IMG/VR virus record: IMGVR_UViG_3300035182_002586
Span: 310,001 to 374,000 of that record
Strand: one strand, 5' to 3'
DNA: 64,000 bases
Made by a program: the position numbers and the translations under genes. Shown one piece after another: positions 22,156-55,334 of the stretch; position 1 is the stretch's first letter; each line of letters opens with the position of its first letter. Under the pieces are notes generated by a model that searched no databases, was not told where the DNA came from, and worked only from the letters and a program-made list of their open reading frames with translations.

Positions 22156-22965
22156 TCACTCGTCGTCGTGGAGCTTGAGGTAGCGCTCGATGGCCGGCGT
22201 CACCTTCTTGCGCTTCCAGTTGTCGAAGGACTTCATCGCGAGGTCCCCCGTGAACTGCTTGGCGAACCCGGGCAGCAGGCCCTTGTTGATGATGTCCTTC
22301 GCCGTCAGACCTTCCGAGGTCATGTGGAAGAACTGCGGCAGGTCCGGGTGGATCGTCTTGAGGAACTCCATGAACTTGTGGAGCTGCTCGGCCGTCATGG
22401 CCTGATCCATCTTCTTGAAGGCGTTCGGATCCTCCGGGTCGATCTGAACGAAGTGCCCCTCGTCGTCCTCGTGCCCGCCGGGCCCGTGGTACTTCTGACG
22501 GCGCTTGTTCTTCGCCATCTTGTTGAGGGCGAACTTCTTGAGCCCATCGAGCACGTAGCTCTCGGCCTGATGGACGTTATAGCTGCCCGAGAAGCTGTGC
22601 CCGTGGAGCAGTTCGAGCTGGTAGTCGCTCAGCGTGTCGTGCACGTCGGGCGTCTTGAACCCGAGGGCGTAGAGCATCTTGGCGGCTCGATCCCCGAGCG
22701 TGGCTCCGTACCCGTGGGGAAGCTTGTTCATGAGACGCGGGCTCGACGTGTCGAACTCCGCAGCCGGGGTCCCGTGGATGTCGGGCATGTTCTTGACGCC
22801 CGCGCGGAGGAACTCGGCGTAGACGAGAAGACCGAACGCCTGCGCGACGGAATCCGTCGCGAGACGCATGAAGCCGAGCATCAGGCGGTAGCCCCTCGGC
22901 ATGGAGGCACCGATGCGGCGCTGGAGGTCGAGGGCGGCCGAGGCAAGGCGGCGCTGAAGGCTCAT
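22156..22965 (-). CDS. ECF sigma-factor-like protein with N-terminal extension
   Basis: Region 2-like DVHDTLSDYQLELL...ESYVLDGLKKFALNKMAKNKRR and region 4-like FFHMTSEGLTAKDI...NWKRKKV; recognised by pattern only. Confidence 0.5.
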   Translation of the reverse strand: MSLQRRLASAALDLQRRIGASMPRGYRLMLGFMRLATDSVAQAFGLLVYAEFLRAGVKNMPDIHGTPAAEFDTSSPRLMNKLPHGYGATLGDRAAKMLYALGFKTPDVHDTLSDYQLELLHGHSFSGSYNVHQAESYVLDGLKKFALNKMAKNKRRQKYHGPGGHEDDEGHFVQIDPEDPNAFKKMDQAMTAEQLHKFMEFLKTIHPDLPQFFHMTSEGLTAKDIINKGLLPGFAKQFTGDLAMKSFDNWKRKKVTPAIERYLKLHDDE

Positions 22966-22978
22966 GCCGTGCCTTTCC

Positions 22979-22984
22979 GATAAA
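22979..22984 (-). promoter_or_regulatory. CTTRTC/TTTATC motif upstream of late-type genes (also 43731, 40282, 36315, 1041, 55360; plus strand 25679, 27597)
   Basis: 13-14 nt before the start in five cases; longer spacing where an SD-like sequence is present. Confidence 0.5.
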
Positions 22985-23006
22985 AGGCGTATCAGCCGGG
23001 ACCCCA

Positions 23007-23246
23007 TTACTGCGCGGCTTCGTCGGAATACACCTCGTCTTCGACGAGCTTCGCGGGCACACCCCCCTTTTTCGGCCGTTTCGCGTACTGCGAAGGCCGG
23101 AAGAGGAAATCCGCCGCTGTGTCCAGAATGACGCTCGCCGGCACGTCTCGCTCCAGGGCCACCCCGTCGGCGTTCTTCCCGACGACAATCCACCCCCGGC
23201 GGAGGAGGACCTGTGCCGCCTTGAGGTTCTTGACCCTGATCTGCAT
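23007..23246 (-). CDS. hypothetical protein
   Basis: 79 aa; GGTGTA 10 nt upstream. Confidence 0.6.
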   Translation of the reverse strand: MQIRVKNLKAAQVLLRRGWIVVGKNADGVALERDVPASVILDTAADFLFRPSQYAKRPKKGGVPAKLVEDEVYSDEAAQ

Positions 23247-23255
23247 ACCTGGGGG

Positions 23256-23948: not shown

Positions 23949-23986
23949 GGGCCGAGACTACACCAGCCGGTGTACCGGCGCGCCCG

Positions 23987-24364
23987 ATGACCCGCATCTT
24001 CCACGCCGTTCTCACCAAGAGACTGCACGTCACCGTCGCCGGAGAGTCCCTCGAAGAGGTCGAAGGGGCCCTGCGTAAGGCCGAGAAGGAAGATGAGATC
24101 GAGGACCTCCAGAAGACCGGGTGGTCCATCGAGGTCGACGACCCCATCGCGAACACGCTTCGGAGGACCACCGCCCGACCGGACGCCGTACCTACCACCT
24201 TCGACCCGCCGGACCACGGTGTTGTGAACGGCTACTGCGTCCCCCTCGGGGCGTACGTGAGGCAGAAGCCTGACTACCTGACCGAGGTGGAGAAGGACGC
24301 GCACGAGGCCGCACAGCAGCTCCACGCCAGGGTCCACAACGCAAAGCTGCCGGGGATCAAGTAG
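23987..24364 (+). CDS. hypothetical protein
   Basis: 125 aa, high GC3; GGTGTA 12 nt upstream. Confidence 0.65.
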   Translation: MTRIFHAVLTKRLHVTVAGESLEEVEGALRKAEKEDEIEDLQKTGWSIEVDDPIANTLRRTTARPDAVPTTFDPPDHGVVNGYCVPLGAYVRQKPDYLTEVEKDAHEAAQQLHARVHNAKLPGIK

Positions 24365-24366
24365 GG

Positions 24367-25077: not shown

Positions 25078-25158
25078 CTCCCCCTACTACTTCGTGGCGG
25101 GCCGCTGATCCATCGAAGGCTTCGCCTTGGCCGGCTGCCCTTCGAGCTTGCGCTTCTC

Positions 25159-25671
25159 CAATACGAGTCGACCTGCTCGAAGTGTCGACACCGCTGGCAG
25201 TGGACCGGCTACAAGACCGGGCTCGGCAAGACGGCCGCGCAGCTCGAAGAGATGCGTACGGCGGGCAAGACCTGCCCCCGCTGCGGTGGACCTGCGACGG
25301 TCGGCCTCGACAACACGAGCGAAGGGGCACAGGCGTTGAACGGTACGCTCGGGAGTCTCTTTGGCGCGCTCGTTCAGAAGCCCGCCCCGTCGCACGGCCT
25401 CCCCCCTCCCCCCTCCGCTTTCTCCACGGCGGAGCCTGTGGTCTTTCCACCCTCGCCATCGCCGCCCTCCCCGACGACGGAGATGTTTCACAGCGGTAGG
25501 CTAGCGCTGGAGACGTTCCACGCCGTCCAAGCCGCCCTCCTGAACTCGGAGTGCAGCCCCCGCGAGGCTGTCGCCGCCGCCCTCAAGGCCGTCGCGCAGT
25601 TCGCCGATGCCGAATCCGTCCTCGGATTCACCGACCTCGCCCGTACGGCGTGGGTGCACAAGGACGGCTGA
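25159..25671 (+). CDS. CxxC/CxxC protein with no identifiable start codon (possibly 5'-truncated)
   Basis: QYESTCSKCRHRWQWTGYKTGLGK...TCPRCGG with high GC3; upstream in-frame sequence looks like antisense shadow. Confidence 0.5.
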   Translation, partial: QYESTCSKCRHRWQWTGYKTGLGKTAAQLEEMRTAGKTCPRCGGPATVGLDNTSEGAQALNGTLGSLFGALVQKPAPSHGLPPPPSAFSTAEPVVFPPSPSPPSPTTEMFHSGRLALETFHAVQAALLNSECSPREAVAAALKAVAQFADAESVLGFTDLARTAWVHKDG

Positions 25672-25697
25672 AAAGCCTCTTGTGCGGCGGGCCGTGT

Positions 25698-27029
25698 ATG
25701 AGCCCGCCCCCGGTTGCCCCCATGCCGATCCGCGTCCTCGACCGCTACGCGGCCGAGACGAAACTCGCGGAAGACCTGACAAAGGGGTGGCTCCTCAAGG
25801 TCAAGAAGCTCTGGAACGACACCCTCAAGAACAACTGGTCGGCCTACAAGACGTTCCAAACACTGGAATACCTGGTGAAGGGCCTCCGTGAGCAGGTGGT
25901 CTTCCAGCGCCAGGGGTACAACACCAAGCACGACTTCTTCGCCCTCCGTCGGAAGATGGAAGCCGCTGTCGAGAAGGTGCTGCACGAGATCCAGGTCAAG
26001 AGCGCCGAGTACGAGAAGCTCAACAACGAGCACACGCACGCTTCGTACGCCGTGCAGGACGCTCGCCTCAAGATCGAGGACGAGACCGGGGACCGCCTCC
26101 AGAAGTTGGGGCCCGAGGAGTACTTCGCGAAGCACCCCGAGGTGAAGCCGCTCAAGGAGAAAGAGGACGCCCTCTACGACCGCCTCAAACCGTTCTCGTA
26201 CGGGCACCTCGTCAAGACACTCGCCCCCGTCACGCGCCACTTCGACGAGCTGATGAAGATCCTCTACGAGGACGCGGCCGACCTCGCCGATGCTCGTAGC
26301 AAGGGTGTAGATGTCGCGGACAAGACCGCGGATCGGGTCTTCGACATCTACGGGATGAAGGTCATCGTCATCGACCCCGAGCTGACGGCCACCGACGTCC
26401 GCAAGTACATCGGCTTCATCGACCAAGCCTATGCAGAGCTGTCGAGGAAGAAGCTGACGCAGGCCGTCTGGAAGGGAAAGTGCTTCATCGACCTCGGGAA
26501 GAATAAGGTCTACACCCCCGAGGAGATGGAGTTCCGCAAGCAGTGGGGGTACACGAACGACGGGGAGGCCGCCCACTACCTATACGGGAAGGACGAGATC
26601 CACCTCACGATGCCGGCGACGAACCACGTTGCCTACACGATCGTGCACGAGATGGGGCACCGCTACTGGTTCAAGGTCATGACCCCCGAGCAGCGGGCCG
26701 TCTTCAACAACCTCGTCCGCACGAAAGAGACCGTGCACAAGCGGGACTTCCCGCAGGGCCCGACGGACGACGAGGGGTACAAGAAGCCCGTGGCGCCGCT
26801 GAACGACTACGCCTCCTCCAACATCGAGGAGGCGTTCGCCGAGGTCTTCGAGGCGTTCGTGATGGGCGGGGAACTCGACCGGGACCAGTTGGAGTCGTTC
26901 AAGAGCGTCCTCCAGCACAAGTTCGCGAGCATCACCGCTCGCGTCCTGGCCCGCTACTTGGCCGCCGGTTCGACGTTCGCGTGCGTCGACCAGAACCACG
27001 CGGACTCCGCCCACTCCTCGGGCGTGTAG
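25698..27029 (+). CDS. zincin-like (HEXXH) metallopeptidase-domain protein
   Basis: IVHEMGHRYWF and downstream DYASSNIEEAFAEVF. Confidence 0.75.
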   Translation: MSPPPVAPMPIRVLDRYAAETKLAEDLTKGWLLKVKKLWNDTLKNNWSAYKTFQTLEYLVKGLREQVVFQRQGYNTKHDFFALRRKMEAAVEKVLHEIQVKSAEYEKLNNEHTHASYAVQDARLKIEDETGDRLQKLGPEEYFAKHPEVKPLKEKEDALYDRLKPFSYGHLVKTLAPVTRHFDELMKILYEDAADLADARSKGVDVADKTADRVFDIYGMKVIVIDPELTATDVRKYIGFIDQAYAELSRKKLTQAVWKGKCFIDLGKNKVYTPEEMEFRKQWGYTNDGEAAHYLYGKDEIHLTMPATNHVAYTIVHEMGHRYWFKVMTPEQRAVFNNLVRTKETVHKRDFPQGPTDDEGYKKPVAPLNDYASSNIEEAFAEVFEAFVMGGELDRDQLESFKSVLQHKFASITARVLARYLAAGSTFACVDQNHADSAHSSGV

Positions 27030-27541: not shown

Positions 27542-27616
27542 GGCCCTAGAGACGCGTGAGGAATGCGCTGTCTGACACTACACCGAGCAGAACCCTCTTG
27601 TCCGCCACCCCTGGTG

Positions 27617-28390
27617 ATGGACACGGCTACCCGCGTGGCGACGCGCTTCCTCCTCGCCACCACCGACATCACGAAGGAATACGTCGAGGAGTTGCTCCAC
27701 ACCAAGGGCTTGTCCCCGATGGCGCTGAGCAAGCTCAAGTCCGTCGCCTACCAGCTCGACATCGGGGGCATGGACGCCTTCCCGGCTGTGGAGTTGCCCG
27801 CCTTCCTGGAGGAGCGCGGTGTTGATGAGGAGTCCATCGAGACACTCAAGAAGGCGCTCACCAAGAAGCCACCGAAGCCGAAGACCGGGGTGTCGTTCAA
27901 CGACGCCTGGATGCAGCTCGGGCGAGCCACCGGCAAGAGCGTCATCTTCCAGGGCGGGCTGGAGCACCAGAAAGACGCAGCGAAGGGCGTCCTCGGTTGG
28001 ATCAAGGCCCTCAAAGGCTTGAAACCAAAGGCAAAGAGCGTCTTCGACAACATGGTCCACAAGATCCGCCTCCGCTCCGGGCGGGGCTCGGAAGACGCTT
28101 CGTGGGACAGCGGGGGCGTCCTTAGCCTCGTCGTCGAGAGCGGTACGCACTCCTCGGGCACCCTCGCGTTCTTCGTCACCCACGAGCTGGGCCACGCCGT
28201 CGAAGAGCACGCCCACGTGCACACACACGAGGCCCCGTGGGGGGCCCCGCCGTTCATCTCTGAGTACGCCGCCTCCAAGCCCTTCGTCGAGGACTTCGCC
28301 GAGTGCTTCCGTGCGTACGTCTTGGAGCCGAGTGCCTTGAAAAAGGCCAGCCCGGCGAAATTCGACGCGGTGAAAGCCCTCGTTGGGTAG
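27617..28390 (+). CDS. second HEXXH metallopeptidase-domain protein
   Basis: VTHELGHAVEE and SEYAASKPFVEDFAECFRAY; N-terminal TRVATRF. Confidence 0.75.
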   Translation: MDTATRVATRFLLATTDITKEYVEELLHTKGLSPMALSKLKSVAYQLDIGGMDAFPAVELPAFLEERGVDEESIETLKKALTKKPPKPKTGVSFNDAWMQLGRATGKSVIFQGGLEHQKDAAKGVLGWIKALKGLKPKAKSVFDNMVHKIRLRSGRGSEDASWDSGGVLSLVVESGTHSSGTLAFFVTHELGHAVEEHAHVHTHEAPWGAPPFISEYAASKPFVEDFAECFRAYVLEPSALKKASPAKFDAVKALVG

Positions 28391-28618: not shown

Positions 28619-28619
28619 C

Positions 28620-31932: not shown

Positions 31933-31939
31933 GCTTATT

Positions 31940-33026: not shown

Positions 33027-33959
33027 TCAGAAGCGGCTGATCACGAGACGGGTCAGGCCACGGGGGTTGAACGCCCCAATGCCGATGTTTTCGAAGCAAG
33101 AGAATCCGATCGTCCGGTTCTTCGGGTCGTCGGCGCTGAGCACGGTCAGCTCCGTACGAACCGGGAAGCGGCCGAAGTTCTCCGGCTCTGCGCACACGTA
33201 CACGAACCCGACCGGCACGAGGCGGCTCGTGATGATCTGCGCGCCCCAGAGGACGGCCTGGAGGCCCGTCTTGAGGAGGGTTGCCTGCGACTCGATGTCG
33301 AGGATGTCGCGGCCGAACTTGCGGATGTCCGCGTAGTCGACTGCGTTCATGTAGATGCGTGCCACGCGGAGGTCGTGGCGCTCGATCTCGGCGAACGCGT
33401 CCGCGAGGACCGACGGCGAGATGGGGGCGACCACGGCCACGTCCGGGTTCGTCTGACCCGGGAGGGTGTCGAAGCCCGACACCGCGATGCTGTCGAGGAC
33501 TGCGAAGACGCGCTCGTCTTCCGCCGCCTGGATCTGCGCCTTCGCGAGGTCCTGGCTGCGCTCGATCAGGTCGAAGCGACGCTCCTTGATCTGCGTGAGC
33601 GGGATCTCCGGGTTCGAGGCGATCTCGAACAGCGGGAAGATCACGCGGCGCGGCTTCTGGACGGCGAGGATGTTCTCGCCTTCCTCGCCGACGACGAAGG
33701 CCGTGACGTCCGGGTCCTTGTCATAGATCGGGAGTGCCCCGTCCGGAAGCTGCTCCACGAGGAAGGTCTTGCGACCGACCGCCGTGTAGTCGCGACGGAG
33801 GCGGAGCGGCTGGATCATCGATGCTGCGAGCTTCGCGCGGCCAGCGGCCGTCTTGATGTACTCGCTGATGATCGCCTGCTTGGTCTCGTTGGAGACCACC
33901 ATCTGCTGCTGGGCGACCGGGGAGAAGCCGCCCATCATCTGCTGCTGCGTCTGGAACAT
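33027..33959 (-). CDS. major capsid protein (HK97-fold expected)
   Basis: GRAKLAASMIQPLR..DY..VGR..VEQLPDGALPIYDKD, FEIASNP, AEDERVF; follows protease, scaffold and a decoration-like gene; followed by a terminator. Confidence 0.8.
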   Translation of the reverse strand: MFQTQQQMMGGFSPVAQQQMVVSNETKQAIISEYIKTAAGRAKLAASMIQPLRLRRDYTAVGRKTFLVEQLPDGALPIYDKDPDVTAFVVGEEGENILAVQKPRRVIFPLFEIASNPEIPLTQIKERRFDLIERSQDLAKAQIQAAEDERVFAVLDSIAVSGFDTLPGQTNPDVAVVAPISPSVLADAFAEIERHDLRVARIYMNAVDYADIRKFGRDILDIESQATLLKTGLQAVLWGAQIITSRLVPVGFVYVCAEPENFGRFPVRTELTVLSADDPKNRTIGFSCFENIGIGAFNPRGLTRLVISRF

Positions 33960-34006: not shown

Positions 34007-34636
34007 TCAGACCCGAACGTCCAGGACGAGGAGAGAGTTGTTCGCGTCGGGGGCGACCTTGCAGACGCCCATGAGGGTCACGAACTTGAGGTCGTTCTGA
34101 CCGGCGACCTGATACTCGTACGCGTCTTCGAGGACGTTCGTGAGCAGGCCGTTGACCGAGGCGAAGAGCATGTCGCCCGGCTGGAAGGTGATCGCGGCCG
34201 AGCCGGTGATCTGGTGCTTCGTCTCGTAGACCGAGACGCCGATCGTCGAGCCCGAGCCGCAGACGTACGGGCCACGGCCCGATGCGACGCCGGGGGTGTT
34301 CTCGAACGCGTTGCCGAGCGCGTCGTTGATGAAGAACCCGAGGGGCTTCATGCGCGCGTCGTACGCCGACGAGACCTTGACCGGACCGCCGACGAATCCG
34401 TTGCCGAAGTCGTAGCGGGGGAAGGCGATCGAACCGCCGAGAACGCCAGCCTTGACGATCCCTGCGAGAGTGGTGGACTTGTTGGCCGCCGCGGTGACGA
34501 TGGGGGGGTTGGCCTGCGTGAACGCATCCGGCGTCAGAACACCCTGCGAGTTGCGGGTGACGACGTAGAAGAGCTGCACGCGACCAGAGGTCTCCCGAAA
34601 GTCACCCGAGGACTGGCCGCCGAGGGGGGATGCCAT
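34007..34636 (-). CDS. putative capsid decoration/minor head protein
   Basis: Gly/Val-rich beta-type protein immediately upstream of the MCP; KPLGFF...GVCKVAP. Confidence 0.55.
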   Translation of the reverse strand: MASPLGGQSSGDFRETSGRVQLFYVVTRNSQGVLTPDAFTQANPPIVTAAANKSTTLAGIVKAGVLGGSIAFPRYDFGNGFVGGPVKVSSAYDARMKPLGFFINDALGNAFENTPGVASGRGPYVCGSGSTIGVSVYETKHQITGSAAITFQPGDMLFASVNGLLTNVLEDAYEYQVAGQNDLKFVTLMGVCKVAPDANNSLLVLDVRV

Positions 34637-34770
34637 TGTTGAATCTCCTGCGACAGTGGAACTGGGGTGGCTTTTGATTCGATTCGATCTTAGCACCCAC
34701 TAAGTGGGTGATTGACTCGTCGTGATGAAGGGCGGCGCGCCGAAGCGGGACGCCCTTCATCCCGGGGCGG

Positions 34771-37997: not shown

Positions 37998-38210
37998 CTA
38001 CGCGACCCTCCGCACCTCGGTCGAGGAGACCGTCGTGGGGTCGTCATCACCGTCGTAGAGAACGCTGAGGGTCAACCCGTGCGCTTCCACGACTGCGCCC
38101 TTCTTGCCCGCTGCGCCCATGACGCGCTCACCGGCTTGGATCGACATGGCTTCCGCCACGTTCGATCGCACCTGCGCAGGACTTCCGAACTTCGCGAAAG
38201 CCATCACCAC
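37998..38210 (-). CDS. small SH3-like hypothetical protein
   Basis: GERV...KGAVVE...VLYDG; head-gene cluster. Confidence 0.55.
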   Translation of the reverse strand: MVMAFAKFGSPAQVRSNVAEAMSIQAGERVMGAAGKKGAVVEAHGLTLSVLYDGDDDPTTVSSTEVRRVA

Positions 38211-45847: not shown

Positions 45848-48800
45848 CTAGATCTGTGCTCTAAGGTTGAACGTGAGGACGAGGTAGAGCAGCGGGAAGA
45901 TCGGCTGATAGCTGGCCGAGAACCGGAGGATCGTGGGATCGCTCGGGTCCACCGCTGCGGTCACGTTCGCGAAGGCGCCGATGATCTCCGCCTGGATGAG
46001 CGTCTTGAAGAGCGCCGTCATCGAGACTTCGACTTCGTTGACGCGGTTCGAGAGGAACTTCGTCCCGACGAACGAGTCGAGGGTGCCGCGCGACTGCTGC
46101 TGCACGAAGTCGGCGATCTGCGTCACCGTCGGCAGACGCGTGAGCACATCCTGCATGTTGGTCGTGAAGCCCTGGCGGATGCGCAGGAACGTCACGAGGT
46201 CTTCGAGCAGGGTGACGCCCGCCACGGCCGTCTGGTTCGCTTCGACCGGATCCAGGATGCGCGGGATGCGCGTGAAGCCCTGGATGCGGCGCCGCGAGTA
46301 CGGGGTGGCCACGTCGACTGCGGGCGAGACCACCGCGCCGGCCACGGCCGCCGCGAAGAAGGTCCCGTCCACCAGGCTCTCGAACGAGTTCCCCACCTCG
46401 TCGGTCAGGGTGATGACCGCCGTGTCCGGGTAGAAGGCGACGATGCGATTCGAGAGCAGCGACTTGGCGACGCTCTGTGCCGCGGTCGGCGTGGTCCCAC
46501 CGGCGAAGCCGATGAAGCCCATGCGCTCGTTCTGGTAGCGAGCCCCCGACTGGACTTCGCAGTGGTTCGTCAGCGCCGTGTAGATCGACGTCGACGTACC
46601 GAGCGGGATGATGATGTCGGGCTTCACGTTCCCGGGGAGCGGCGTCGCCAGCGCGTTGATCGCGTTGATGAAGTCGGTGTCGCTCGCCTGGTTCGTGTTC
46701 GGGACCTTCGGCACCTGCTTGATCCCGACGAGGATGGCCCCGTTGAGGATCGCGAGGTAGGCGCCGAGGGTGACGCGGTTCTCTGCGCTCGTCGTGCCGA
46801 AGTTGGCTTCGACCGTCTTGAGCTGCTGGAAGAGCCGAGTCGAGAAGTCCTGCTTGAGGAAGCGGTACGAGATGAAGTAGAAGTCGCCGTTCTTCGGCTC
46901 GACGCCCGAGGGGGCGAAGGTGAAGAGGGTCGAGGTGTCGTTGACACCGATTCCCACCGTGTTCGCGACGATCAGCTCCAGGCCGCCGATCGCGTAGGTC
47001 GGGACGTTCGGCGAGACGTGGAACGTCTGCGAGACCGTCATGTTGAAGGACCCGCCCGGCGAGTAGCTGCCGGTCGTCGCCGGGAGCACCGTGAAGCGGA
47101 GACCCGTCACCGGATCCGTGTAGGTCTGGCCCGGGGTGCCCGTGCCGCTCGACCCGTTCGGGTTGGTGGACGTGACGGTGTAGTTGTCCTGTGCGTCCTC
47201 GCCCACGTCACCAGAGGTGCCCGGGATGATGCCCGTACCCGACTGGATGTTGAAGGCCGAGTTCGCGCTGTTCGTGAACCCGATCGACGAGGTGGCCGCG
47301 CCGGTCGTGAGCGACTCGAACGTGATGTACGTGTGACCCGCGACCGCTGCGGTGTAGGCCACCGCGCCGGCCGTGAAGGCACCGTCACTCATGAGCACGT
47401 CGACGACTTCCTGAGCCGCCACGAGGGTCTGGCTGGCCTGTGCCCCCTGCGTGAAGCCGAGGACCGTGTTGGCCGAACCCGACCCGATGATGATCGCGCT
47501 CGACGTGTCGTTCGTCGGGCTCGTGAGGCGCACCTTGTTGACGTTCGCGAGGGTACCCGCCGCCGCGACGCCCGAGAGGCCCGGGACCAGGTTGATGGCG
47601 GCTGCCACTGCGGCTGCCGTCACTGCTGCACCGCCGGGGAGGGTGACCGAGTAGTCGACCCCGTTGACCCGGACGAGGAGCGTGTCGTTGAGGCCCGTCG
47701 TGATGTTGAACGGACCGACGCTGGTGCCGAGGATGGTCGCCGGCTTGTTGACGGCGCCCGGGGTGCCGTCCGCACGGGCGAAGGTCGTGAACCCGAGGAG
47801 GGTCTCGGCCGTGCCCTGACGGACGCGCACGTAGCTCGCGGCGTCGAATCCGCCCGGAAGGGCAGCCGGCGTCGAGTAGCTCTGGATGGCGAAGAACACC
47901 GGACCGCCCGCGCCGCCGATCTGGAACGACGTGGCGAGGTTGTTCGGCGCCGTGCCCGCGAAGGCCGGGGCAGCGTCGATGGCGGCGTTGATGTCCGTGA
48001 GGATCTGCGCGACCGTACGGACGCCGGACGTGAGGGCCACCGACACGTCGGTGCCGTCGATCGTCAGGTTCAGCACGTTGTTCGGCGAGGCCGGCACCGT
48101 GATCTGGTTCAGACCCGTGACCGACACGCGCGCGCCGACGAGCCAGCCCTTCGAGGCGGTCGCGAGGTTGTCCGTGATGTCGACGCCGTTGACCTTCGTG
48201 ACCCACGTTGCCGAGGTCGAGGCGAAGAAGTTGTACGGCGAGCCGCCCGCGATCGTGTACGCGGCGTTCGTGGCCGATGCGGTCCCGAAGGTGACCGTGA
48301 CGGTCTCGGACACTGCCGTACCCGCACCCGTGTGGTACGCGTCGGGGATCGTCTCCGAACCACGCGGCCACTGGACCGTCTGCGACAGGCCCGACTTCGT
48401 GCCGAAGCGCACCTGGTAGAGACCCGCGTTCTTCAGCGTCGAGAAGAGCGTGTACTGACCCGACCCCACCGGCCCTGCGACCGTGTTGGTGAGGATGAAC
48501 GTGTCGTCCGAGACCTTGTTGTAGTAGAAGGTCGCGTAGACGTTCCAGTCCGGCGGCAGTGCGTTCTTGAGGGTGATGCGGCGGTTCACGCCGTCGACTG
48601 CCGTGACCGTCTGCACCGGACGGTTGAGAGCATCACGGAGGTTGCGACCCGCATAGACCACCACGAGGTCCGGGCGGTTCGTCACGAGGTCCTGACGCGC
48701 GTTCGCCACCGCGTTGTAGAGCGGGAGGCCGAGCGGCGTGTTGCGACCGTTGCCGGTCGTCGGGATCTCGGGGAGGAGGAAGTCCGTCGTCGAGGTCACC

Positions 48801-50116
48801 GCGGGGATGACCGAGGTGTCGACCACCGGCACGCAGGCCGCGAGCCACATCTTCTGGTCGATGAGGGTCGGGATGATCTGCTGCGTCCCGAAGGGCGTCG
48901 CACCCGGGGTCGTCGTGGTCGGCGTGACCGAGTAGCCGACGCCCCAGTTGACGATCGAGACCGTCGGGCTCGGGTTCGCGATCACGAAGTCCTGGCCCTG
49001 GAGGAAGTCGTTGCGGCCTGCCGAGATGCCGCAGCGGATCACGCTCGTGATCGAGGTGTTCGGCAGGTAGTCGAACGTCCCCTGCCAGGTGTTCGCCCAG
49101 TACTGGATGGTGACGCTGCTACCCGGGGCGGGCGGCGAGGCGAGGGTCACGATGCCGTTGGCACCGTCGACCGCCGTGGGGATCACCTGGATGTTGTTCA
49201 CCTTGACGACGACCTTCGAGGGGTCCGTCGTCGTCGTGCCGGCGCTCGTCCCGTCCACGATCGGACGCTGGAAGACGCGGAACGCGGCGTTGCGGCCGGT
49301 GCTCGCGCCCGACGTGAAGCCGAGCGGACCGTTCGCGTTGCCGTCTCCGATGAGGAGGGAGACCGTCGAGGTGAACTGGAGGTGGTTGCGGCCCTGCGGG
49401 TCGATGTAGACCGAGGTGGAGAGCCCCGGCACCAGCGCCGCATCGATCATCGCCTTGAGCGAGACCGCGGTGGTGGACGAACCAGGGGTCAACACGATGG
49501 TGGCCGTGCCACCGTTCACCGTGATGACGAACGTGTCGCTGATGCCAGCCTGGATGTTGAAGGGCTCGTAGCCCGGGCCGATCAGCGTCGCGTTGGTCGA
49601 GGTGACCTGCGACGACACGTCGTCGGTGAAGCTCGTGTCACCGCGGTGGAAGAAGTAGGTGCAGCGCACCGTGTCGGTCGGCTGGGTGGGCACCTGGAGG
49701 GTCACGAGACCCTTCGCGCCCTGCACCGAACCGATGGCGACCGGCGTGCCGTTCACCGTCACGACCACGCTGCGGACGTCGTTGGTGACGCGCCCGAAGC
49801 CCTGACCGTCGACGAGCGGGAAGTTGCGGACCCGGAAGGTCGAACGCGTGCCGTCCTGCGCACCGAGGACGAGGTTCTGAGGGTTCGTCGCATCGACGAC
49901 CCAGCTCAGGCTCACGTCTTCTGCGGTGACCTCGGTGTCGACCGTGGAGCTAGATCCACGGACCATCTCCAGGTCGAGCTGCTCCAGCTCTTCCTGACCG
50001 ACACCGATGATCGCCGGGATACGCAGACCCGCGACCACGTTCTGGAGGTTGACCTCCGCAAGGGTTCGCGTGTAGACGCCGGGCGGGACGTAGCTGATGA
50101 ACGGACCCAAGGCCAT
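45848..50116 (-). CDS. contractile tail sheath protein (very large, 1423 aa)
   Basis: N-terminal YVPPGVYT and C-terminal sheath core (ERMGFIG...GTFFAAAVAG...RIRQGFTT...PIFPLLYLVLTF). Confidence 0.88.
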   Translation of the reverse strand: MALGPFISYVPPGVYTRTLAEVNLQNVVAGLRIPAIIGVGQEELEQLDLEMVRGSSSTVDTEVTAEDVSLSWVVDATNPQNLVLGAQDGTRSTFRVRNFPLVDGQGFGRVTNDVRSVVVTVNGTPVAIGSVQGAKGLVTLQVPTQPTDTVRCTYFFHRGDTSFTDDVSSQVTSTNATLIGPGYEPFNIQAGISDTFVITVNGGTATIVLTPGSSTTAVSLKAMIDAALVPGLSTSVYIDPQGRNHLQFTSTVSLLIGDGNANGPLGFTSGASTGRNAAFRVFQRPIVDGTSAGTTTTDPSKVVVKVNNIQVIPTAVDGANGIVTLASPPAPGSSVTIQYWANTWQGTFDYLPNTSITSVIRCGISAGRNDFLQGQDFVIANPSPTVSIVNWGVGYSVTPTTTTPGATPFGTQQIIPTLIDQKMWLAACVPVVDTSVIPAVTSTTDFLLPEIPTTGNGRNTPLGLPLYNAVANARQDLVTNRPDLVVVYAGRNLRDALNRPVQTVTAVDGVNRRITLKNALPPDWNVYATFYYNKVSDDTFILTNTVAGPVGSGQYTLFSTLKNAGLYQVRFGTKSGLSQTVQWPRGSETIPDAYHTGAGTAVSETVTVTFGTASATNAAYTIAGGSPYNFFASTSATWVTKVNGVDITDNLATASKGWLVGARVSVTGLNQITVPASPNNVLNLTIDGTDVSVALTSGVRTVAQILTDINAAIDAAPAFAGTAPNNLATSFQIGGAGGPVFFAIQSYSTPAALPGGFDAASYVRVRQGTAETLLGFTTFARADGTPGAVNKPATILGTSVGPFNITTGLNDTLLVRVNGVDYSVTLPGGAAVTAAAVAAAINLVPGLSGVAAAGTLANVNKVRLTSPTNDTSSAIIIGSGSANTVLGFTQGAQASQTLVAAQEVVDVLMSDGAFTAGAVAYTAAVAGHTYITFESLTTGAATSSIGFTNSANSAFNIQSGTGIIPGTSGDVGEDAQDNYTVTSTNPNGSSGTGTPGQTYTDPVTGLRFTVLPATTGSYSPGGSFNMTVSQTFHVSPNVPTYAIGGLELIVANTVGIGVNDTSTLFTFAPSGVEPKNGDFYFISYRFLKQDFSTRLFQQLKTVEANFGTTSAENRVTLGAYLAILNGAILVGIKQVPKVPNTNQASDTDFINAINALATPLPGNVKPDIIIPLGTSTSIYTALTNHCEVQSGARYQNERMGFIGFAGGTTPTAAQSVAKSLLSNRIVAFYPDTAVITLTDEVGNSFESLVDGTFFAAAVAGAVVSPAVDVATPYSRRRIQGFTRIPRILDPVEANQTAVAGVTLLEDLVTFLRIRQGFTTNMQDVLTRLPTVTQIADFVQQQSRGTLDSFVGTKFLSNRVNEVEVSMTALFKTLIQAEIIGAFANVTAAVDPSDPTILRFSASYQPIFPLLYLVLTFNLRAQI

Positions 50117-50315
50117 GGGGGTGGTCTCCTCGGAGGGGCGGCAGAGCTTCTTTGATCCAGATTTCGGGTCAAACAATGACCCACACAACCGTCAAGCCGT
50201 CCCCACTTGGACGACCAGCCTTTGATCCCATCCGTTATGAATCCGATCTTGCCGCTGGTGAGGCGGCTACGACTCGGCGTACCGAGCCGTACAGCACACG
50301 GCCCGCATAAGACGA

Positions 50316-52035: not shown

Positions 52036-52449
52036 TCAACGAACGGTGAGATTGTCCGGGTTGAGCCGGGTGATGTGGCCGTGAACGAGGTTCGCGAGAT
52101 TGCGGCCCATCTCGTTGGCATCGATGAAGACGCTTCCGCCCCCGTGGACGTCGAATCGACCTTCCACGAGGATGGCCGACGCGATCGCCTTCACGGCCTT
52201 ACCGTCGGCGAAGAGGGACACGGAGATCTGGCCCCGCGTCTTGGGGTTCTCGATGATGAACGCCCCTGTCAGCTCGGTGTTCGAGGTCGTCACGCGACGA
52301 TCGAGCTTCCAGCCGAGGCCCATGGATGCCTCGAACGAATAGGCCAACGTCTGTGCGAACGAGGCGAAGTAGTCCGCCATGCTTGCACCCGAAGCCGTCT
52401 TCGGATCCGAGGCCGTCTTCCATGCAGGGTGGTTGGGGGCGTAGTGCAT
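52036..52449 (-). CDS. hypothetical protein with KTAS motifs
   Basis: WKTASDPKTASG N-terminus; AGGAG upstream. Confidence 0.65.
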   Translation of the reverse strand: MHYAPNHPAWKTASDPKTASGASMADYFASFAQTLAYSFEASMGLGWKLDRRVTTSNTELTGAFIIENPKTRGQISVSLFADGKAVKAIASAILVEGRFDVHGGGSVFIDANEMGRNLANLVHGHITRLNPDNLTVR

Positions 52450-52460
52450 CGAACGGTCTC

Positions 52461-53474
52461 CTACTCCGAGTGGGCATCACGCGCGAGAACCAGCAGGCCC
52501 TCGGCTACGGCGGTCATCGGGTCCTTCGCCTGACGGACCTCGCTGATCGGGATCGGGAAGCCGCGCTTCTTCACGGCCTCGAACTCTTCCTTGAAGATGT
52601 CCATGAACCCGTCGGCCTTCGACGTACCGCCGGAGACGACGAACGGGATGGCATCGGGGAGGTCGATCTTCGTTTGGCTCTTGCGGAACTGCGCTGCGAT
52701 GTTGTCGAGGCAGTACGTGATGAGGGCGCGGATGTAGAGCGCGATCGCCTCCTGCTCACGGCCAACCGGCTTCGTGAGATTGACGCCCTTCTCCTTGATC
52801 GCGCACATGCGGGCCGGCGTTGAACCCATCGCCTTGGCTGCGTGGGCGTCGACCCAATCACCGCCACGTGCGAGGGCGAACGAGAGACCCTCGACCGTCT
52901 GGTACGAGAGGGCCACGTTGCACATACCCGACCCGAAGCTCACCGCGAGACCTGAGAAGCCGTCGTCCGCGCAGTTCGAGTAGACGATGGCCATCGCCTC
53001 GTTCGTCGGGACGGCCTTGTACCCGTGCTCGGTGATGATCTTCCGGAAGATCTCAGTGTGGTACACGATGTCCTGGCCTTCGTCGTCGACCGGGGCAGCG
53101 GGCACGCTGTAGTAGCAGTTCTCGCCGGAGACGACCGGATCCTCCAGGACCTTGTAGACGAGAAGGCTCAGGATCTCCTGCGCGTCCACCTCGGCGGAGG
53201 ACACGACACCCCGTGCCAGCGGACGGCGCACGTCACGCTTGAACAGGTTTGCCATCGTAAGGGCACTGTCCCCGATGACGATGATCTGCCCATCCTTCTC
53301 GATGTACGAGACCTTGGACATCCTGAGAGAGCGTTTCGCCTCCGGGTCTAGATCCAGGAAGGCGTCGCGGACCCTCTGTGTCACGGTTTTGTCGTTGTCG
53401 TTCGTGCGAGCAGAAACCAAATTCATGGTTCCCACGTCGAGTCCGACCCCAGGTCTCATTTTCGCGTCGCCCAT
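52461..53474 (-). CDS. actin-like (ASKHA) ATPase
   Basis: GLDVGT (phosphate 1), NEAMA (connect 1), SFGSGMCNV (phosphate 2), VSGGTS (adenosine), DPMTAVAEG (connect 2). Confidence 0.88.
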   Translation of the reverse strand: MGDAKMRPGVGLDVGTMNLVSARTNDNDKTVTQRVRDAFLDLDPEAKRSLRMSKVSYIEKDGQIIVIGDSALTMANLFKRDVRRPLARGVVSSAEVDAQEILSLLVYKVLEDPVVSGENCYYSVPAAPVDDEGQDIVYHTEIFRKIITEHGYKAVPTNEAMAIVYSNCADDGFSGLAVSFGSGMCNVALSYQTVEGLSFALARGGDWVDAHAAKAMGSTPARMCAIKEKGVNLTKPVGREQEAIALYIRALITYCLDNIAAQFRKSQTKIDLPDAIPFVVSGGTSKADGFMDIFKEEFEAVKKRGFPIPISEVRQAKDPMTAVAEGLLVLARDAHSE

Positions 53475-54262
53475 TTGATCTTCTCCCTGATTCGATTTTC
53501 ACATGCTGCGGGGTCTGTCTGGATGTCACGTTCCCACAGACGAAGCACAGACAGCCCTCGCATCAAAGCCTGCTTGTCGGCCAAAGTGTCCAGCCCCTTG
53601 CGTTGTCTCTGCCTCGGGCTGAGTTGCTTGTAAACGGCTGGATTACCGTGCCAGTAATCTCCGGTTTGGATCACAACTCCCAGGGAGGGGATAAGAAAGT
53701 CCACGGTGAAGTCCCCCACCTGTCCCTGTGCGACGAAATCCACCGTGAGGCGTTCTAGTACCCCTCTGACCCAAGCCTCAATTTTCGTCTCCCGTCGTTG
53801 AAACTTGCGAAGCCTCTCTGGTGAGGCAGCTCGGAGCTTGGCCTTGTACTCCTCTGCCTGAGTTGGACCGTACGTTTCTTCGTAGGAGCGCCCCGCTTTA
53901 GACTGGACGTGTGCTCTGATCCCACGTGTGATCTCAGCGACGTACTTGGGATCTTGGTAGAGGTGTTTGACCCTGTGGACAGGGTTCGCTTCACCTCGCT
54001 GCTGCTCTCCGAACTCGGGGTGCACACGATGCCATCGACAAAGAGGGTTTCGGTCCCCCTCCAACCATGGCTTGTCCCTCTCAGAAAGCGTCTTGGTACG
54101 TAGCCCATGCCGACGTAGTTCACGCTGGATCGTTGCGGACCCGCAGTGGAAAAACGTCTTCAAATCTGACAGCCGTGCGTCTGGATTCGCAGCCAGTACG
54201 GCTTCCAGTTCGGCTTTGGGTATCTCTCGCCCAGGCATTGTTCCTACATCTGAGCCTGGCAT
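53456..54262 (-). mobile_element. free-standing Vsr/DUF559-like endonuclease, possibly degenerate
   Basis: ETKIE...FTVDFLIP...VIQTGDYWHGNP...LRLWERDI; lower GC3; overlaps the actin-like gene start. Confidence 0.75.
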
Positions 54263-54273
54263 AAGAGCAATCT

Positions 54274-55002
54274 CTAGCGGCAGTCGTACTTGTAGCCCGA
54301 CTGAGAAGCCGTCTTCGCCGTCCTCTGGTTCAGGAGGTAGACGAACTCCTCGTGCTTGTCGGCGATGCCCTGGAGCATGTTGTCCGTGCCCGACGAGAGC
54401 ATGTTGAGGGCCGTCAGGTCCGCCCTCACAGCCTCGACGAGCGCGATGGCCATCTTCACGACCGCCAGACTGCACGCAGGGAAGTTCGCAGGCCCTTCGA
54501 GACCTTCCGGCTGCGCGTAGGCCACGAGAACCGCCTGGTGGGCCATCTGGATGACCGGACCCACGTACTCGACGCCCCCCGTGCTGACCGTGCGCTCGGC
54601 CCACGAGTCGATCAGCCCGTTCGTGTCGTTGTAGAGGCGATCGAAGAGAAGGTGGTCCCCGTAGTAGTCCGGGCCCCTCGTCTGCCAGTGGTGCGTCTGG
54701 TGGATGACGGTCTCCGCCCGGAGCATCGACAGCAGCACGCCCATGAGCCCGAAGGGACCCGCGTACTGCGCCTTCAAGAGCCCGAAGACCTTCTCCGGAG
54801 ACGCTCCCGCAAGCCACTGTGACGGCGGCAGCATGAGCGGCGTGTCTGCGCCGACCGCCGCCGTCTTCGGACGTGCGGATGCAATCGGAGCCCCATCGAC
54901 GGTCTGACCGGGGAGGTAGGGCGGACCGTGCGCGAAGTGGTTGTACTGCGTAGGGTCGTGCCAGATCGCGTAGGCTGCCGCGCCGTTGGGATCGTGAGCC
55001 AT
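54274..55002 (-). CDS. Dps/ferritin-like protein with N-terminal extension
   Basis: HQTHHWQTRGPDYYGDHLLFDRLYND...IDSWAER...DKHEEFVYLL. Confidence 0.8.
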   Translation of the reverse strand: MAHDPNGAAAYAIWHDPTQYNHFAHGPPYLPGQTVDGAPIASARPKTAAVGADTPLMLPPSQWLAGASPEKVFGLLKAQYAGPFGLMGVLLSMLRAETVIHQTHHWQTRGPDYYGDHLLFDRLYNDTNGLIDSWAERTVSTGGVEYVGPVIQMAHQAVLVAYAQPEGLEGPANFPACSLAVVKMAIALVEAVRADLTALNMLSSGTDNMLQGIADKHEEFVYLLNQRTAKTASQSGYKYDCR

Positions 55003-55334
55003 CACTTCACCGCCTTGTCCTTCAGCAGCGTACGGAGGTGCTCGATGTCGCCCGGGAAGATCCAGCCTTCCCACGCCTTCGTGAGCTTGGCCTCCGCCGC
55101 CTTGAACGCGGGACCAACCTTCGGATCGAGCGCGATGGGAGAGTCGGACTCCAGGGCACTCAGCTCGATGTGGGCGTCCTGGAGGAGCTTCCCCGCTTCC
55201 TTGAGGGCGTGCTCGATCTTCGCGAGCTGCGCGAGGTACTTGGGCACGTTGGCCTGGAGCTGCTCCGGGTGCGGGACGACCCTGGCAAGGACCTCTCGCG
55301 ACTGCTGAATGAGACTGGCCTGACGAGCGTGCAT
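55002..55334 (-). CDS. hypothetical helical protein
   Basis: MHARQASL...; AGGAG upstream; ATGA overlap with the next gene. Confidence 0.65.
   Translation of the reverse strand: MHARQASLIQQSREVLARVVPHPEQLQANVPKYLAQLAKIEHALKEAGKLLQDAHIELSALESDSPIALDPKVGPAFKAAEAKLTKAWEGWIFPGDIEHLRTLLKDKAVK

What the first reader, a model, noticed from the sequence alone, without database searches (positions are those of the whole stretch)
22156..55334. Recurrent [K/R]-x-A-[S/A] and RVAxR[F/Y] motifs: candidate prohead-protease sites that may flag capsid cargo
Seen: scaffold (KKAS, KTAD, KTAA, KQAF, KTAS, RTAS); 1403-aa protein (RVAALY, KTAARVATRF, KIAS, KQAA, KQAS, RTAA); 38204 (RQAS, KIAA); 39042 (KTAE); MCP (KTAA, KLAA); 52036 (KTAS x2); Dps-like (KTAA, KTAS); 55002 (RQAS); both HEXXH proteins (RVLARY, RVATRF); sigma-like (RLAS, RLAT). 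They tend to sit at domain boundaries or termini. Established: T4 gp21 and phiKZ gp175 process many head proteins at short consensus sites. Inference: an Ala-specific consensus here, which would predict packaged enzymes encoded outside the head cluster.
Basis: inference. Interest (0 to 1): 0.6.

Follow-up and report, generated by a model that had tools for sequence, protein, structure and literature searches.

The report
Predicted capsid-protease cut sites in megaphage
A short peptide motif (Lys/Arg-x-Ala-Ser/Ala) is over-represented in the head-assembly proteins of this 529-kb phage and its many uncultured relatives; it most likely marks where the phage's herpesvirus-like capsid protease cuts, and a second motif (RVAxRF/Y) looks like a terminal tag on about a dozen other proteins.

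Summary
In the head module (window 33-44 kb), [KR]xA[SA] occurs 23 times against 8.9 expected. The replication module shows 10 against 8.6. The refined [KR][TQS]A[SA] occurs 25 times against 5.7 expected in genome segment 340-400 kb and 37 against 34 elsewhere. None of 23 permuted orders is comparably enriched, and Glu-type (T4/phiKZ) motifs are at expectation.

Homologues from IMG/VR keep the motif in scaffold, the 247-aa protein, MCP, the 1403-aa protein, protease and the Dps-like protein. They lack it in the decoration-like protein, tail-terminator-like protein and volactin.

The protease (36326-37993) has the herpesvirus assemblin/T4 gp21 fold (Z 10-11) with invariant His and Ser. The motif flanks its catalytic domain in 82 diverse relatives, in phage G gp19 and in Tunturi_5 gp331. 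This layout resembles herpesvirus R and M sites, which are cut after Ala.

Cleavage itself is inferred, not shown. The 4-mer cannot flag cargo outside the head cluster, because its background density there equals expectation. RV[AL]xR[FYW] is a separate, mostly terminal motif: 14 observed against 1.7 expected. It sits on two zincins, a DnaJ-domain protein and a 2H phosphoesterase, and is a candidate targeting tag.

The parts
36326..37993 (-). Prohead protease, 555 aa (true start MAFLKY at 37993; the longer ORF runs to 38050). It has an N-terminal catalytic domain, an acidic or variable linker and a conserved C-terminal domain.
   Evidence: phrog_18299 head maturation protease E 4e-9; homologous to phage G gp19, E 1e-16; start fixed by alignment.
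37151..37993 (-). Catalytic domain with the assemblin/T4 gp21 fold. The candidate catalytic residues are His126 (37616-37618, YVEH) and Ser177 (within TLSMG, 37457-37471). A Zn-ribbon is inserted (C187, C190, C201).
   Evidence: AF2 pLDDT 88.6; VIA Z 11.2 to VZV protease, 10.2-10.7 to PrV pUL26N, 10.2 to T4 gp21; residues invariant in 82 representatives.
37877..37888 (-). KEAS, the candidate N-terminal autoprocessing site (residues 36-39), lying in a low-confidence loop.
   Evidence: pLDDT below 50 at residues 30-40. Family columns read [QRK]-A61/82-[S42/A18]. Phage G gp19 has KTAA43 and Tunturi_5 gp331 has KTAA33.
37121..37132 (-). KAAA, the candidate release site directly after the catalytic domain and before the variable acidic linker.
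   Evidence: In 82 representatives the columns read K56/R20 - A54/V11 - A79 - S41. Phage G gp19 has KVAS248 and KIAS274; Tunturi_5 gp331 has KVAS265.
34771..36282 (-). Scaffold-like protein, 503 aa, with a Q/A-rich centre. Candidate sites are KTAA87 (36013-36024), KTAS438 (34960-34971), RTAS446 (34936-34947) and KKAS14 (36232-36243).
   Evidence: Homologues carry 3.19 motifs per sequence against 0.24 expected. FNHPE-[KR]TA[SA] is present in 50 of 59 and RTAS-x-RTVG in about 59 of 59.
33027..33902 (-). Major capsid protein (HK97 fold family). The likely start is M at 33902. KTAA lies at 33843-33854, residue 17 from that start.
   Evidence: phrog_2522 E 4e-53. KTAA is present in 80 of 80 relatives, and Tunturi_5 has KSAA at the same place. 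Phage G has ETEE and Myrna has no motif there.
38204..38947 (-). 247-aa head-module protein of unknown function. KIAA174 lies at 38417-38428.
   Evidence: The [KR]-[TS]-A-A-Y-W column is conserved (K36/R7, A36, A33 of 43). The family carries 0.86 motifs per sequence against 0.07 expected.
39506..43717 (-). 1403-aa K-rich protein, not the portal. KTAA-RVATRF lies at 40301-40330, just before a conserved 'YSSY' C-terminal domain. An N-terminal RVAALY lies at 43529-43546.
   Evidence: There is no similarity to the phage G portal. The family keeps [KR][TQ]A[SA] immediately upstream of YSSY, after an indel-rich region, and keeps the N-terminal RVxxR[FWY].
54274..55074 (-). Dps/ferritin-like protein; the likely start is the M giving MAHDPNG. 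KTAA lies at 54856-54867, in the linker between a conserved N-terminal peptide and the ferritin domain.
   Evidence: Ferritin hits fall below the Pfam cutoffs (PF00210 3.5e-4; DUF5856). Nine of 10 homologue sequences (L086 has KRAD) carry at least one [KR]TA[SA] in this linker, at drifting positions. Protease-fold proteins annotated as Dps occur in BFVD.
52036..52449 (-). 137-aa protein with two N-terminal KTAS copies (52390-52419).
   Evidence: The gene is absent from most relatives. One positional counterpart has an N-terminal KTAD.
27617..28390 (+). HEXXH zincin-like protein, 257 aa from M at 27617, with RVATRF at residues 6-11 (27632-27649).
   Evidence: The database gene call is 257 aa (P0268). 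The N-terminal RV[AL]xR[FYW] is kept in 10 of 15 homologues.
25551..27029 (+). Second HEXXH protein, 492 aa, with RVLDRY (25731-25748) and a C-terminal RVLARY (26940-26957).
45848..50188 (-). Tail sheath, used as an internal negative control.
   Evidence: Homologous to Tunturi_5 gp326 sheath, E 2e-51. [KR]xA[SA] occurs once against 1.4 expected, and the refined motif not at all.
34007..34696 (-). 229-aa protein in the position of the phage G decoration gene, used as a negative control.
   Evidence: No motif in the window copy and none in 77 homologues.

Best explanation
The window lies in a 529-kb tailed phage related to Bacillus phage G and Tunturiibacter phage Tunturi_5. Its head module encodes a serine prohead protease with the herpesvirus assemblin/T4 gp21 fold. 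[KR]-x-A-[SA], with T, Q or S favoured at x, is most likely that protease's recognition site. By analogy with assemblins, the cut would fall between Ala (P1) and Ser/Ala (P1').

The proposed sequence of events is as follows.
1. The protease frees its catalytic domain by cutting at K36-E-A-S in a flexible N-terminal loop and at K-A-A-A directly after the domain. The second cut would correspond to a herpesvirus R site.
2. It cuts the scaffold at the conserved HPE-KTA-[SA] and RTAS-x-RTVG sites, the latter about 55 residues from the C terminus and so comparable to an M site. It also cuts at scattered KQA[AS] sites in the Q-rich core, so that the scaffold can leave the shell.
3. It trims about 19 residues from the MCP.
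4. It separates linker-joined parts of internal proteins: the 1403-aa protein before its YSSY domain, the 247-aa protein, and the Dps-like protein ahead of its ferritin domain.

Shown here: the enrichment, its order-specificity, its conservation, the protease fold and the invariant His and Ser. Inferred: that these sites are cut, which bond is cut, and that the substrates are inside the prohead.
For: - Enrichment is confined to the head and virion segment and is order-specific.
- The motif is kept in homologues at 40-60% identity. Scaffold has 3.19 per sequence against 0.24 expected, the 247-aa protein 0.86 against 0.07, the Dps-like protein 0.9 against 0.08, and MCP 80 of 80. It is absent from the decoration-like, tail-terminator-like and volactin families.
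- In linkers the motif persists while its exact position drifts, as expected of a short linear motif.
- The protease fold matches VZV, PrV and T4 gp21 proteases at Z 10-11. The top 38 rows are all assemblins or gp21, and BFVD hits include named prohead proteases and phage G gp19.
- His126 and Ser177 are invariant.
- The motif brackets the catalytic domain in 82 representatives clustered at 50% identity (A invariant in 79 of 82 at the post-domain site), in phage G gp19 and in Tunturi_5 gp331.
- In Tunturi_5, head proteins carry 24 against 9.5 expected and tail proteins 5 against 10.2.
- Herpesvirus R and M sites are cut after Ala, at the protease-scaffold junction and near the scaffold C terminus (PMC4498786).
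- Glu-type motifs are not enriched.
Against: - There is no proteomic or biochemical datum for any member of this clade. The phage G mass-spectrometry paper could not be read.
- Phage G's MCP and its scaffold-like gp21 lack the motif at the aligned sites, and Myrna's MCP lacks it as well. The rule is therefore not universal in the wider family.
- MCP residues N-terminal to KTAA are themselves highly conserved, which is unusual for a discarded peptide.
- Some KQA[AS] copies lie in Q/A/E-rich repeats, where local composition helps to produce them.
- Conservation of a site does not distinguish cleavage from binding.
- The unbiased tripeptide scan alone is not significant after multiple-test correction.
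- A co-fold of the protease with the scaffold C terminus gave no answer.
Confidence: 0.58

Rival explanations
1. The motif is a short linear binding or targeting element that is conserved but not cleaved. It could, for example, dock head proteins to the scaffold, the MCP interior or the protease C-terminal domain.
For: Conservation and linker location fit any short linear motif. The MCP segment upstream of KTAA is conserved, as if it were retained. RV[AL]xR[FYW] shows that this phage does use terminal peptide tags.
Against: The motif sits on both flanks of the protease's own catalytic domain across very diverse homologues, followed by a disordered acidic linker. It occurs in multiple scattered copies in the scaffold core. 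Both features are typical of processing sites rather than docking sites. The invariant Ala followed by a small residue matches the assemblin P1/P1' pattern.
Confidence: 0.15
2. The enrichment is a by-product of structure or composition with no dedicated function. Examples would be helix and coiled-coil preferences of scaffold-like proteins, Q/A/K-rich repeats, or shared ancestry of paralogous segments.
For: Several copies lie in Q/A/E-rich repeats (KQAAEQQ units; the scaffold core). The motif and the region bounds were refined after looking at the data. KTA alone fails Bonferroni correction.
Against: Local 40-aa shuffles give the same expectation as global ones. The 23 permuted orders and single-position variants are not enriched. 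KTA[SA] sites outside repeats are the best conserved. The same positions recur in phage G and Tunturi_5 proteases, whose composition is very different.
Confidence: 0.12
3. The sites are cut by a different protease: one of the two adjacent HEXXH zincins (25551-27029, 27617-28390) or a host enzyme.
For: Two zincin-like genes lie 5-8 kb from the MCP. Host-protease processing of capsid proteins is known in Staphylococcus phage 80alpha (own knowledge).
Against: The zincin cassette is absent beside the MCP in all 80 relatives that keep the motif. The motif brackets the serine protease's own domain. Phage G and Tunturi_5 keep the pattern in their proteases.
Confidence: 0.05
4. Separate claim on the second motif. 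RV[AL]xR[FYW] is a capsid-targeting or otherwise compartment-targeting peptide. It marks about 12 proteins, most encoded outside the head cluster, for packaging. In some it is juxtaposed to a [KR]TA[SA] site.
For: It occurs 14 times against 1.67 expected and is the best of 60 residue orders, the next best giving 5. Twelve of 14 copies lie near a terminus (P 0.001). It is conserved at the N terminus of the zincin family (10 of 15) and of the 1403-aa family. Juxtapositions include KTAA-RVATRF, KTAH-RVLARY and STAS-RVLKRY. Bearers include zincins, a DnaJ-domain protein and a 2H phosphoesterase.
Against: There is no evidence that any bearer is in the virion. The motif could equally bind a chaperone, a nucleus-like compartment or nucleic acid. 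The start codons of several bearers are uncertain. Conservation could be tested in only two families.
Confidence: 0.3

Closest known systems
Herpesvirus assemblin (pUL26/UL80a) with R (release) and M (maturational) sites
   Same: The fold is the same (Z 9-11) and both are Ser/His enzymes. In both, the catalytic domain is followed by a linker and a C-terminal part. In herpesviruses the candidate sites have Ala at P1 and Ser/Thr/Ala at P1', one directly after the protease domain and one near the scaffold C terminus (PrV YLQA-T and VQA-S, PMC4498786).
   Different: Here the scaffold is a separate gene with no similarity to the protease C-terminal domain. The preferred upstream residue is Lys/Arg at P3 rather than a hydrophobic P4/P3. 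A Zn-ribbon is inserted in the domain. Sequence identity is only 8-13%. The third catalytic residue was not identified. Cleavage is unproven.
T4 gp21, phiKZ gp175 and SPN3US gp245 prohead proteases and their head-wide consensus sites
   Same: The concept is the same: one prohead protease and a 3-4 residue consensus recurring in scaffold, MCP, the protease itself and internal or ejection proteins (AXE for SPN3US, PMC10052503). The fold is shared with gp21 (Z 10.2).
   Different: Those enzymes cut after Glu. Here [LIV]xE, [SAG]xE and AxE are at expectation, with ratios of 1.0-1.2, and the enriched motif has Ala where they have Glu.
Bacillus phage G gp19 (prohead protease candidate) and Tunturi_5 gp331 (annotated head maturation protease)
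   Same: They are true homologues (E 1e-16 and 4e-50). Gene order from protease through scaffold-like and decoration genes to the MCP is syntenic. K-[TV]-A-[AS] lies on both sides of the catalytic domain.
   Different: Those proteases are about 290-300 aa and lack the roughly 250-aa C-terminal domain. Phage G's MCP and gp21 lack the motif at the aligned positions.
T4 capsid-targeting sequence and encapsulin cargo-loading peptides (compared with RV[AL]xR[FYW])
   Same: Both are short terminal peptides shared by otherwise unrelated proteins. Ferritin-like cargo in HK97-fold shells is the encapsulin precedent (own knowledge). Protease-fold proteins annotated as Dps exist in phages.
   Different: There is no sequence resemblance to either. 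The motif occurs at N or C termini and twice internally. Packaging is untested.

Membership tests
Assemblin/gp21-fold prohead serine proteases (herpesvirus S21; phage T4 gp21 and HK97 gp4-like families) | Characteristic beta-barrel protease fold | tested here: met
   AF2 model pLDDT 88.6. VIA Z 11.2 (VZV, rmsd 3.1, 126 aa) and 10.2 (T4 gp21, rmsd 3.0, 126 of 165 aa). The next unrelated fold (MCE) scores Z below 7. BFVD hits to named prohead proteases have E values of 1e-6 to 1e-7.
Assemblin/gp21-fold prohead serine proteases | Conserved catalytic His and Ser, with His about 50 residues upstream of Ser | tested here: inconclusive
   His126 and Ser177 are invariant in 82 representatives and are 51 residues apart. 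The residue-level superposition onto known catalytic residues was not available, the third triad member was not identified, and activity was not tested.
Assemblin/gp21-fold prohead serine proteases | Gene lies in the head module next to the scaffold and MCP | tested here: met
   The gene order is protease 36326-37993, scaffold 34771-36282, 229-aa gene, MCP 33027-33902. The same order is seen in phage G and Tunturi_5.
Assemblin/gp21-fold prohead serine proteases | Sequence match to curated family models (Pfam S78, U9, U35) | tested here: not met
   There is no Pfam protease hit, even at E 5, for 30 members. Only PHROG 18299 matches (E 4e-9), together with the unnamed phrog_2774. No PDB sequence hit was found. 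Membership therefore rests on fold, not on sequence models.
Assemblin-type Ala-Ser specificity with R-site and M-site topology | Consensus with Ala at P1 and Ser/Ala at P1' directly after the protease domain and near the scaffold C terminus | tested here: met
   This is met as sequence only. The post-domain columns read K/R - x - A(79 of 82) - S(41 of 82). The scaffold site RTAS is present in about all 59 homologues, about 55 aa from the C terminus.
Assemblin-type Ala-Ser specificity with R-site and M-site topology | Actual hydrolysis of the Ala-Ser bond at those sites | not testable with these tools
   This needs mass spectrometry of virions or an in-vitro assay. The co-fold gave no answer.
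T4/phiKZ-type Glu-specific prohead protease sites | x-x-Glu consensus enriched in head proteins | tested here: not met
   The ratios are [LIV]xE 1.02, [SAG]xE 1.11 and AxE 1.24 in the head module, none significant.
Capsid-targeting or cargo-loading peptides (for RV[AL]xR[FYW]) | Short terminal peptide shared by unrelated proteins and conserved within their families | tested here: met
   14 observed against 1.67 expected, with 12 of 14 terminal. The motif is conserved in the zincin family and the 1403-aa family.
Capsid-targeting or cargo-loading peptides (for RV[AL]xR[FYW]) | Bearers are found inside the capsid, and the peptide is necessary and sufficient for packaging | not testable with these tools
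   No virion proteome is available for this clade.

The most novel reading that the evidence does not exclude
A globally distributed megaphage clade (phage G-like; 576 or more IMG/VR contigs) runs a herpesvirus-style maturation system. This comprises Ala-Ser cleavage, a release site after the protease domain and a maturation site near the scaffold C terminus. In addition, it uses a distinct terminal peptide, RV[AL]xR[FYW], to load enzymes into the capsid for delivery with the DNA. The candidate cargo includes two zincins, a DnaJ-domain protein and a 2H phosphoesterase with a sub-threshold Acb1 match; a Dps/ferritin-like protein, which lacks this peptide, may be loaded through its own N-terminal extension.
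Probability: 0.2. Interest if true: 0.8.

Novelty: new variant of a known kind. Interest (0 to 1): 0.55.

Why it matters
Prohead-protease consensus sites are the main handle for predicting mature virion proteins and packaged or ejected proteins in giant phages. They are known experimentally only for T4-like and phiKZ-like phages, where the cut follows Glu. A testable Ala-type rule for the phage G/Tunturi_5/megaphage clade would allow annotation of mature capsid components across hundreds of uncultured genomes.

It would also tighten the evolutionary link between phage and herpesvirus maturation, adding shared specificity and site topology to the shared fold. It would point to candidate injected enzymes as well.

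Two cultured relatives, phage G and Tunturi_5, make the prediction directly testable by mass spectrometry.

Tried and rejected
- Nucleotide search of the head region against GenBank phages found no match.
- Pfam found no protease family for the protease, even at E 5 on 30 members. A profile search against PDB sequences returned only noise.
- The first AF2 run, on 30 close homologues, failed (pLDDT 41). It succeeded only after the library-wide profile search supplied diverse sequences.
- Complex prediction of the protease domain with scaffold residues 425-503 returned no answer (score 0.00). This is neither support nor evidence against.
- The idea that the 1403-aa protein is the portal was rejected. 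It has no similarity to the phage G portal or to Tunturi_5 gp328. The portal homologue lies at G000 57453-59399.
- A DNA-level motif was rejected, because the wobble bases differ between copies.
- Similarity between the protease C-terminal domain and the scaffold (a herpes-like nested arrangement) was not found.
- The phage G structure and mass-spectrometry paper (J Mol Biol 2020) is not held. Other phage G and Tunturi papers contain no cleavage data.
- Homologues of the + strand cassette, which includes the zincins, were not found beside the MCP in 80 relatives. A search for relatives of the 2H phosphoesterase in IMG/VR gave one distant hit.
- ESM Atlas look-ups for the 247-aa protein and the C-terminal domain of the 1403-aa protein gave nothing usable.
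- PHROG and Pfam left most genes at 374-397 kb unnamed. Whether the motif-bearing proteins there are head or tail parts is therefore unknown.
- Gene calls are my own crude GC3-based calls. Several start codons were corrected from alignments, and others remain uncertain.

Full report
**Context**

The window is bases 310001-374000 of a single 528,957-bp contig with 64% G+C.

- Window 0-18 kb holds replication genes: DNA polymerase, helicases, DnaB and thymidylate synthase.
- Window 33-44 kb, on the minus strand, holds a head module.
- The head module comprises the MCP (33027-33902, phrog_2522 E 4e-53), a 229-aa gene in the position of the phage G decoration gene, a Q/A-rich scaffold-like protein (34771-36282), a protease (36326-37993), and proteins of 247, 133 and 1403 aa.
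- The 1446-aa protein (45848-50188) is the tail sheath, and 50787-51965 resembles a tail terminator.
- The portal homologue lies far away, at G000 57453-59399.

The MCP has 576 relatives in IMG/VR. Among GenBank phages its relatives are an uncultured 485-kb phage (83% identity), Tunturiibacter phage Tunturi_5 (49%), Bacillus phage G (39%) and cluster C mycobacteriophages (29%). The window therefore belongs to a phage G-like megaphage.

**Observation**

The statistics are as follows.

Whole-protein shuffles and 40-residue local shuffles give the same expectation. The rest of the genome has a ratio of 1.04.
The replication module has 10 observed against 8.6 expected, and the head module has 23 against 8.9.
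- Refining P2 to T/Q/S gives 25 against 5.7 in genome segment 340-400 kb and 37 against 34 elsewhere.
- The other 23 orders of the same residue classes give ratios of 0-2.5. The highest of these overlaps the motif through KTAA.
- Replacing [KR] by [DE], Ala by Gly or Ser, or [SA] by G/T, D/E or L/I/V removes the enrichment. Glu-type motifs of the T4 and phiKZ kind are at expectation.
- Codons differ at wobble positions between copies, so the signal is in the protein.

Two caveats apply. An unbiased tripeptide scan ranks KTA 4th of 8000, behind only the scaffold's QQA, AQQ and QAQ. Its P of 4e-5 does not survive Bonferroni correction alone. The refinements were also made after looking at the data.

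**Conservation**

Neighbours of the MCP are only 40-60% identical among 80 fetched relatives, which makes conservation informative. With the window sequence excluded, the counts of motifs per sequence against expectation are as follows.

| Family | Motifs per sequence | Expected |
|---|---|---|
| Scaffold | 3.19 | 0.24 |
| 247-aa protein | 0.86 | 0.07 |
| Dps-like protein | 0.9 | 0.08 |
| MCP | 1.0 | 0.08 |
| 1403-aa protein | 1.2 | 0.5 |
| Protease | 0.47 | 0.19 |

The decoration-like, 321-aa, 146-aa, tail-terminator-like and 251-aa families have none, and volactin is at background.

Fixed sites in the scaffold include FNHPE-[KR]TA[SA] (50 of 59 homologues), ML[PA]-K[TS]AS (25 of 59) and RTAS-x-RTVG near the C terminus (in about all). 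KQA[AS] copies wander through the Q-rich core.

In the 1403-aa family, [KR][TQ]A[SA] sits immediately before a conserved 'YSSY' C-terminal domain and after an indel-rich region. In the Dps-like family the motif lies in the linker between a conserved N-terminal peptide and the ferritin domain. Its position drifts, which is typical of a short linear motif.

**The enzyme**

Pfam gives nothing for the protease. PHROG gives a weak 'head maturation protease' hit. The protein is homologous to phage G gp19.

A profile search of 1.84 billion representatives found 2044 relatives. With 82 diverse sequences in the alignment, AlphaFold gave a confident model with pLDDT 88.6. Structural alignment puts herpesvirus proteases and T4 gp21 on top: Z 11.2 for VZV, 10.2-10.7 for pseudorabies pUL26N and 10.2 for gp21. 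All of the top 38 rows are of this family. BFVD hits include phage G gp19 and many named prohead proteases.

His126 and Ser177 are invariant.

**Where the motif sits on the enzyme**

K36-E-A-S lies in the only low-confidence loop of the model, at residues 30-40. The family columns there read [QRK]-A(61 of 82)-[S42/A18].

Directly after the domain, the 82 representatives read K56/R20 - A54/V11 - A79 - S41, followed by a variable acidic linker.

Phage G gp19 has KTAA43, KVAS248 and KIAS274. Tunturi_5 gp331 has KTAA33 and KVAS265. In Tunturi_5, head proteins carry 24 motifs against 9.5 expected, while tail proteins carry 5 against 10.2.

Herpesvirus proteases cut after Ala at an R site between the protease and the scaffold part, and at an M site near the scaffold C terminus. 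For pseudorabies virus these are YLQA-T and VQA-S (PMC4498786). The layout here parallels that arrangement.

**Interpretation**

The best explanation is that [KR]-x-A-[SA] is the cleavage consensus of this protease, with Ala at P1. It would be used for autoprocessing, scaffold removal, MCP trimming and processing of internal proteins. I put this at about 0.58.

The points against are these.

- No proteomic datum was accessible.
- Phage G's MCP and gp21, and Myrna's MCP, lack the motif at the aligned sites.
- The MCP N-terminal peptide is conserved.
- Part of the KQA[AS] signal lies in repeats.
- A co-fold attempt gave no answer.

The rivals are an uncleaved binding motif, a structural by-product, and cleavage by another protease.

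**Cargo prediction**

The 4-mer cannot flag cargo elsewhere in the genome, because its density there equals expectation.

One outside candidate stands out. A 306-aa Q/A/E-repeat protein at G000 282455-283375 has 7 copies. It lies next to the homologue of Tunturi_5 virion protein gp329.

**The second motif is a separate element**

- RV[AL]xR[FYW] occurs 14 times against 1.67 expected. It is the best of 60 residue orders, and the next best gives 5.
- Twelve of the 14 copies lie near a terminus (P 0.001).
- It is conserved at the N terminus of the zincin family (10 of 15 homologues) and of the 1403-aa family.
- Bearers include both HEXXH proteins, a DnaJ-domain protein and a 2H phosphoesterase with a sub-threshold Acb1 match.
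- Three copies directly follow a TA[AHS] (TAA, TAH, TAS): KTAA-RVATRF, KTAH-RVLARY and STAS-RVLKRY.

This motif is a candidate targeting tag (confidence about 0.3), but nothing shows that its bearers are packaged. Protease-fold proteins annotated as Dps or ferritin in BFVD are an independent hint that ferritin-like proteins are linked to the capsid interior.

**Verdict**

The finding is a new variant (Ala-type specificity with a herpes-like site topology) of a known kind of system (prohead protease consensus sites). It is testable in the cultured phages G and Tunturi_5.

Noticed in passing
window 33027-33902; L001-L080: The MCP is 92-97% identical across the best 80 of 576 IMG/VR contigs, while the adjacent scaffold, protease and decoration-like genes are only 40-60% identical. 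This is an unusually sharp contrast in constraint, or it reflects recent spread of the capsid gene.
   Followed up: partly
relatives of window 36326-37993 (e.g. P0122, P0131, P0135): Many homologues of the prohead protease are 900-1960 aa and match the profile in 2-5 separate stretches. One that was checked carries Hint and LAGLIDADG hits at the break. Inteins therefore appear to interrupt the protease gene at several recurrent positions.
   Followed up: partly
window 52461-53474: A volactin-family actin homologue (PF25216, E 2e-75) lies between tail genes and the Dps-like gene. It is conserved directly next to the tail-terminator homologue in relatives.
   Followed up: no
G000 57453-59399: The portal homologue (phage G gp14-like, E 4e-46) lies about 285 kb away from the MCP, protease and scaffold module, so the head genes are split between distant loci.
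   Followed up: no
window 54868-55002 (N-terminal part of the Dps-like protein): A conserved N-terminal peptide, A-[IV]-W-[HQ]-D-P-x-x-Y...GPPYLP, precedes the linker and ferritin domain in all relatives and is unique in this genome. BFVD holds protease-fold proteins annotated as Dps/ferritin (622 and 679 aa), which suggests protease-Dps fusions elsewhere.
   Followed up: partly
G000 282455-283375 (outside the window): A 306-aa protein with KQAAEQQVAEEQA repeats carries seven [KR]xA[SA] copies. It lies next to the homologue of Tunturi_5 virion structural protein gp329 and may be a second scaffold-like or internal head protein.
   Followed up: partly
window 23800-31800 (+ strand cassette): A block of + strand genes that includes the two HEXXH zincin-like proteins has no counterpart beside the MCP in 80 relatives. 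It appears to be a variable insertion in the otherwise minus-strand module.
   Followed up: partly
window 53456-54250, 44770-45744, 59897-61369: A low-GC3 gene with a weak endonuclease hit, and HNH and homing-endonuclease genes, are interspersed in the structural region.
   Followed up: no
window 27617-28390 (P0268): The identical protein is recorded on a contig of 620,031 bp, longer than the 528,957-bp assembly held here. The assembly at hand may therefore be incomplete, or a longer version may exist.
   Followed up: no
G000 299997-300770 and 125601-126635 (outside the window): A 2H phosphoesterase (LigT-type hits above the Pfam cutoff, Acb1 model below it) and a DnaJ-domain protein each carry a C-terminal RV[AL]xRY peptide. 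If the peptide is a packaging tag, these would be injected enzymes.
   Followed up: partly
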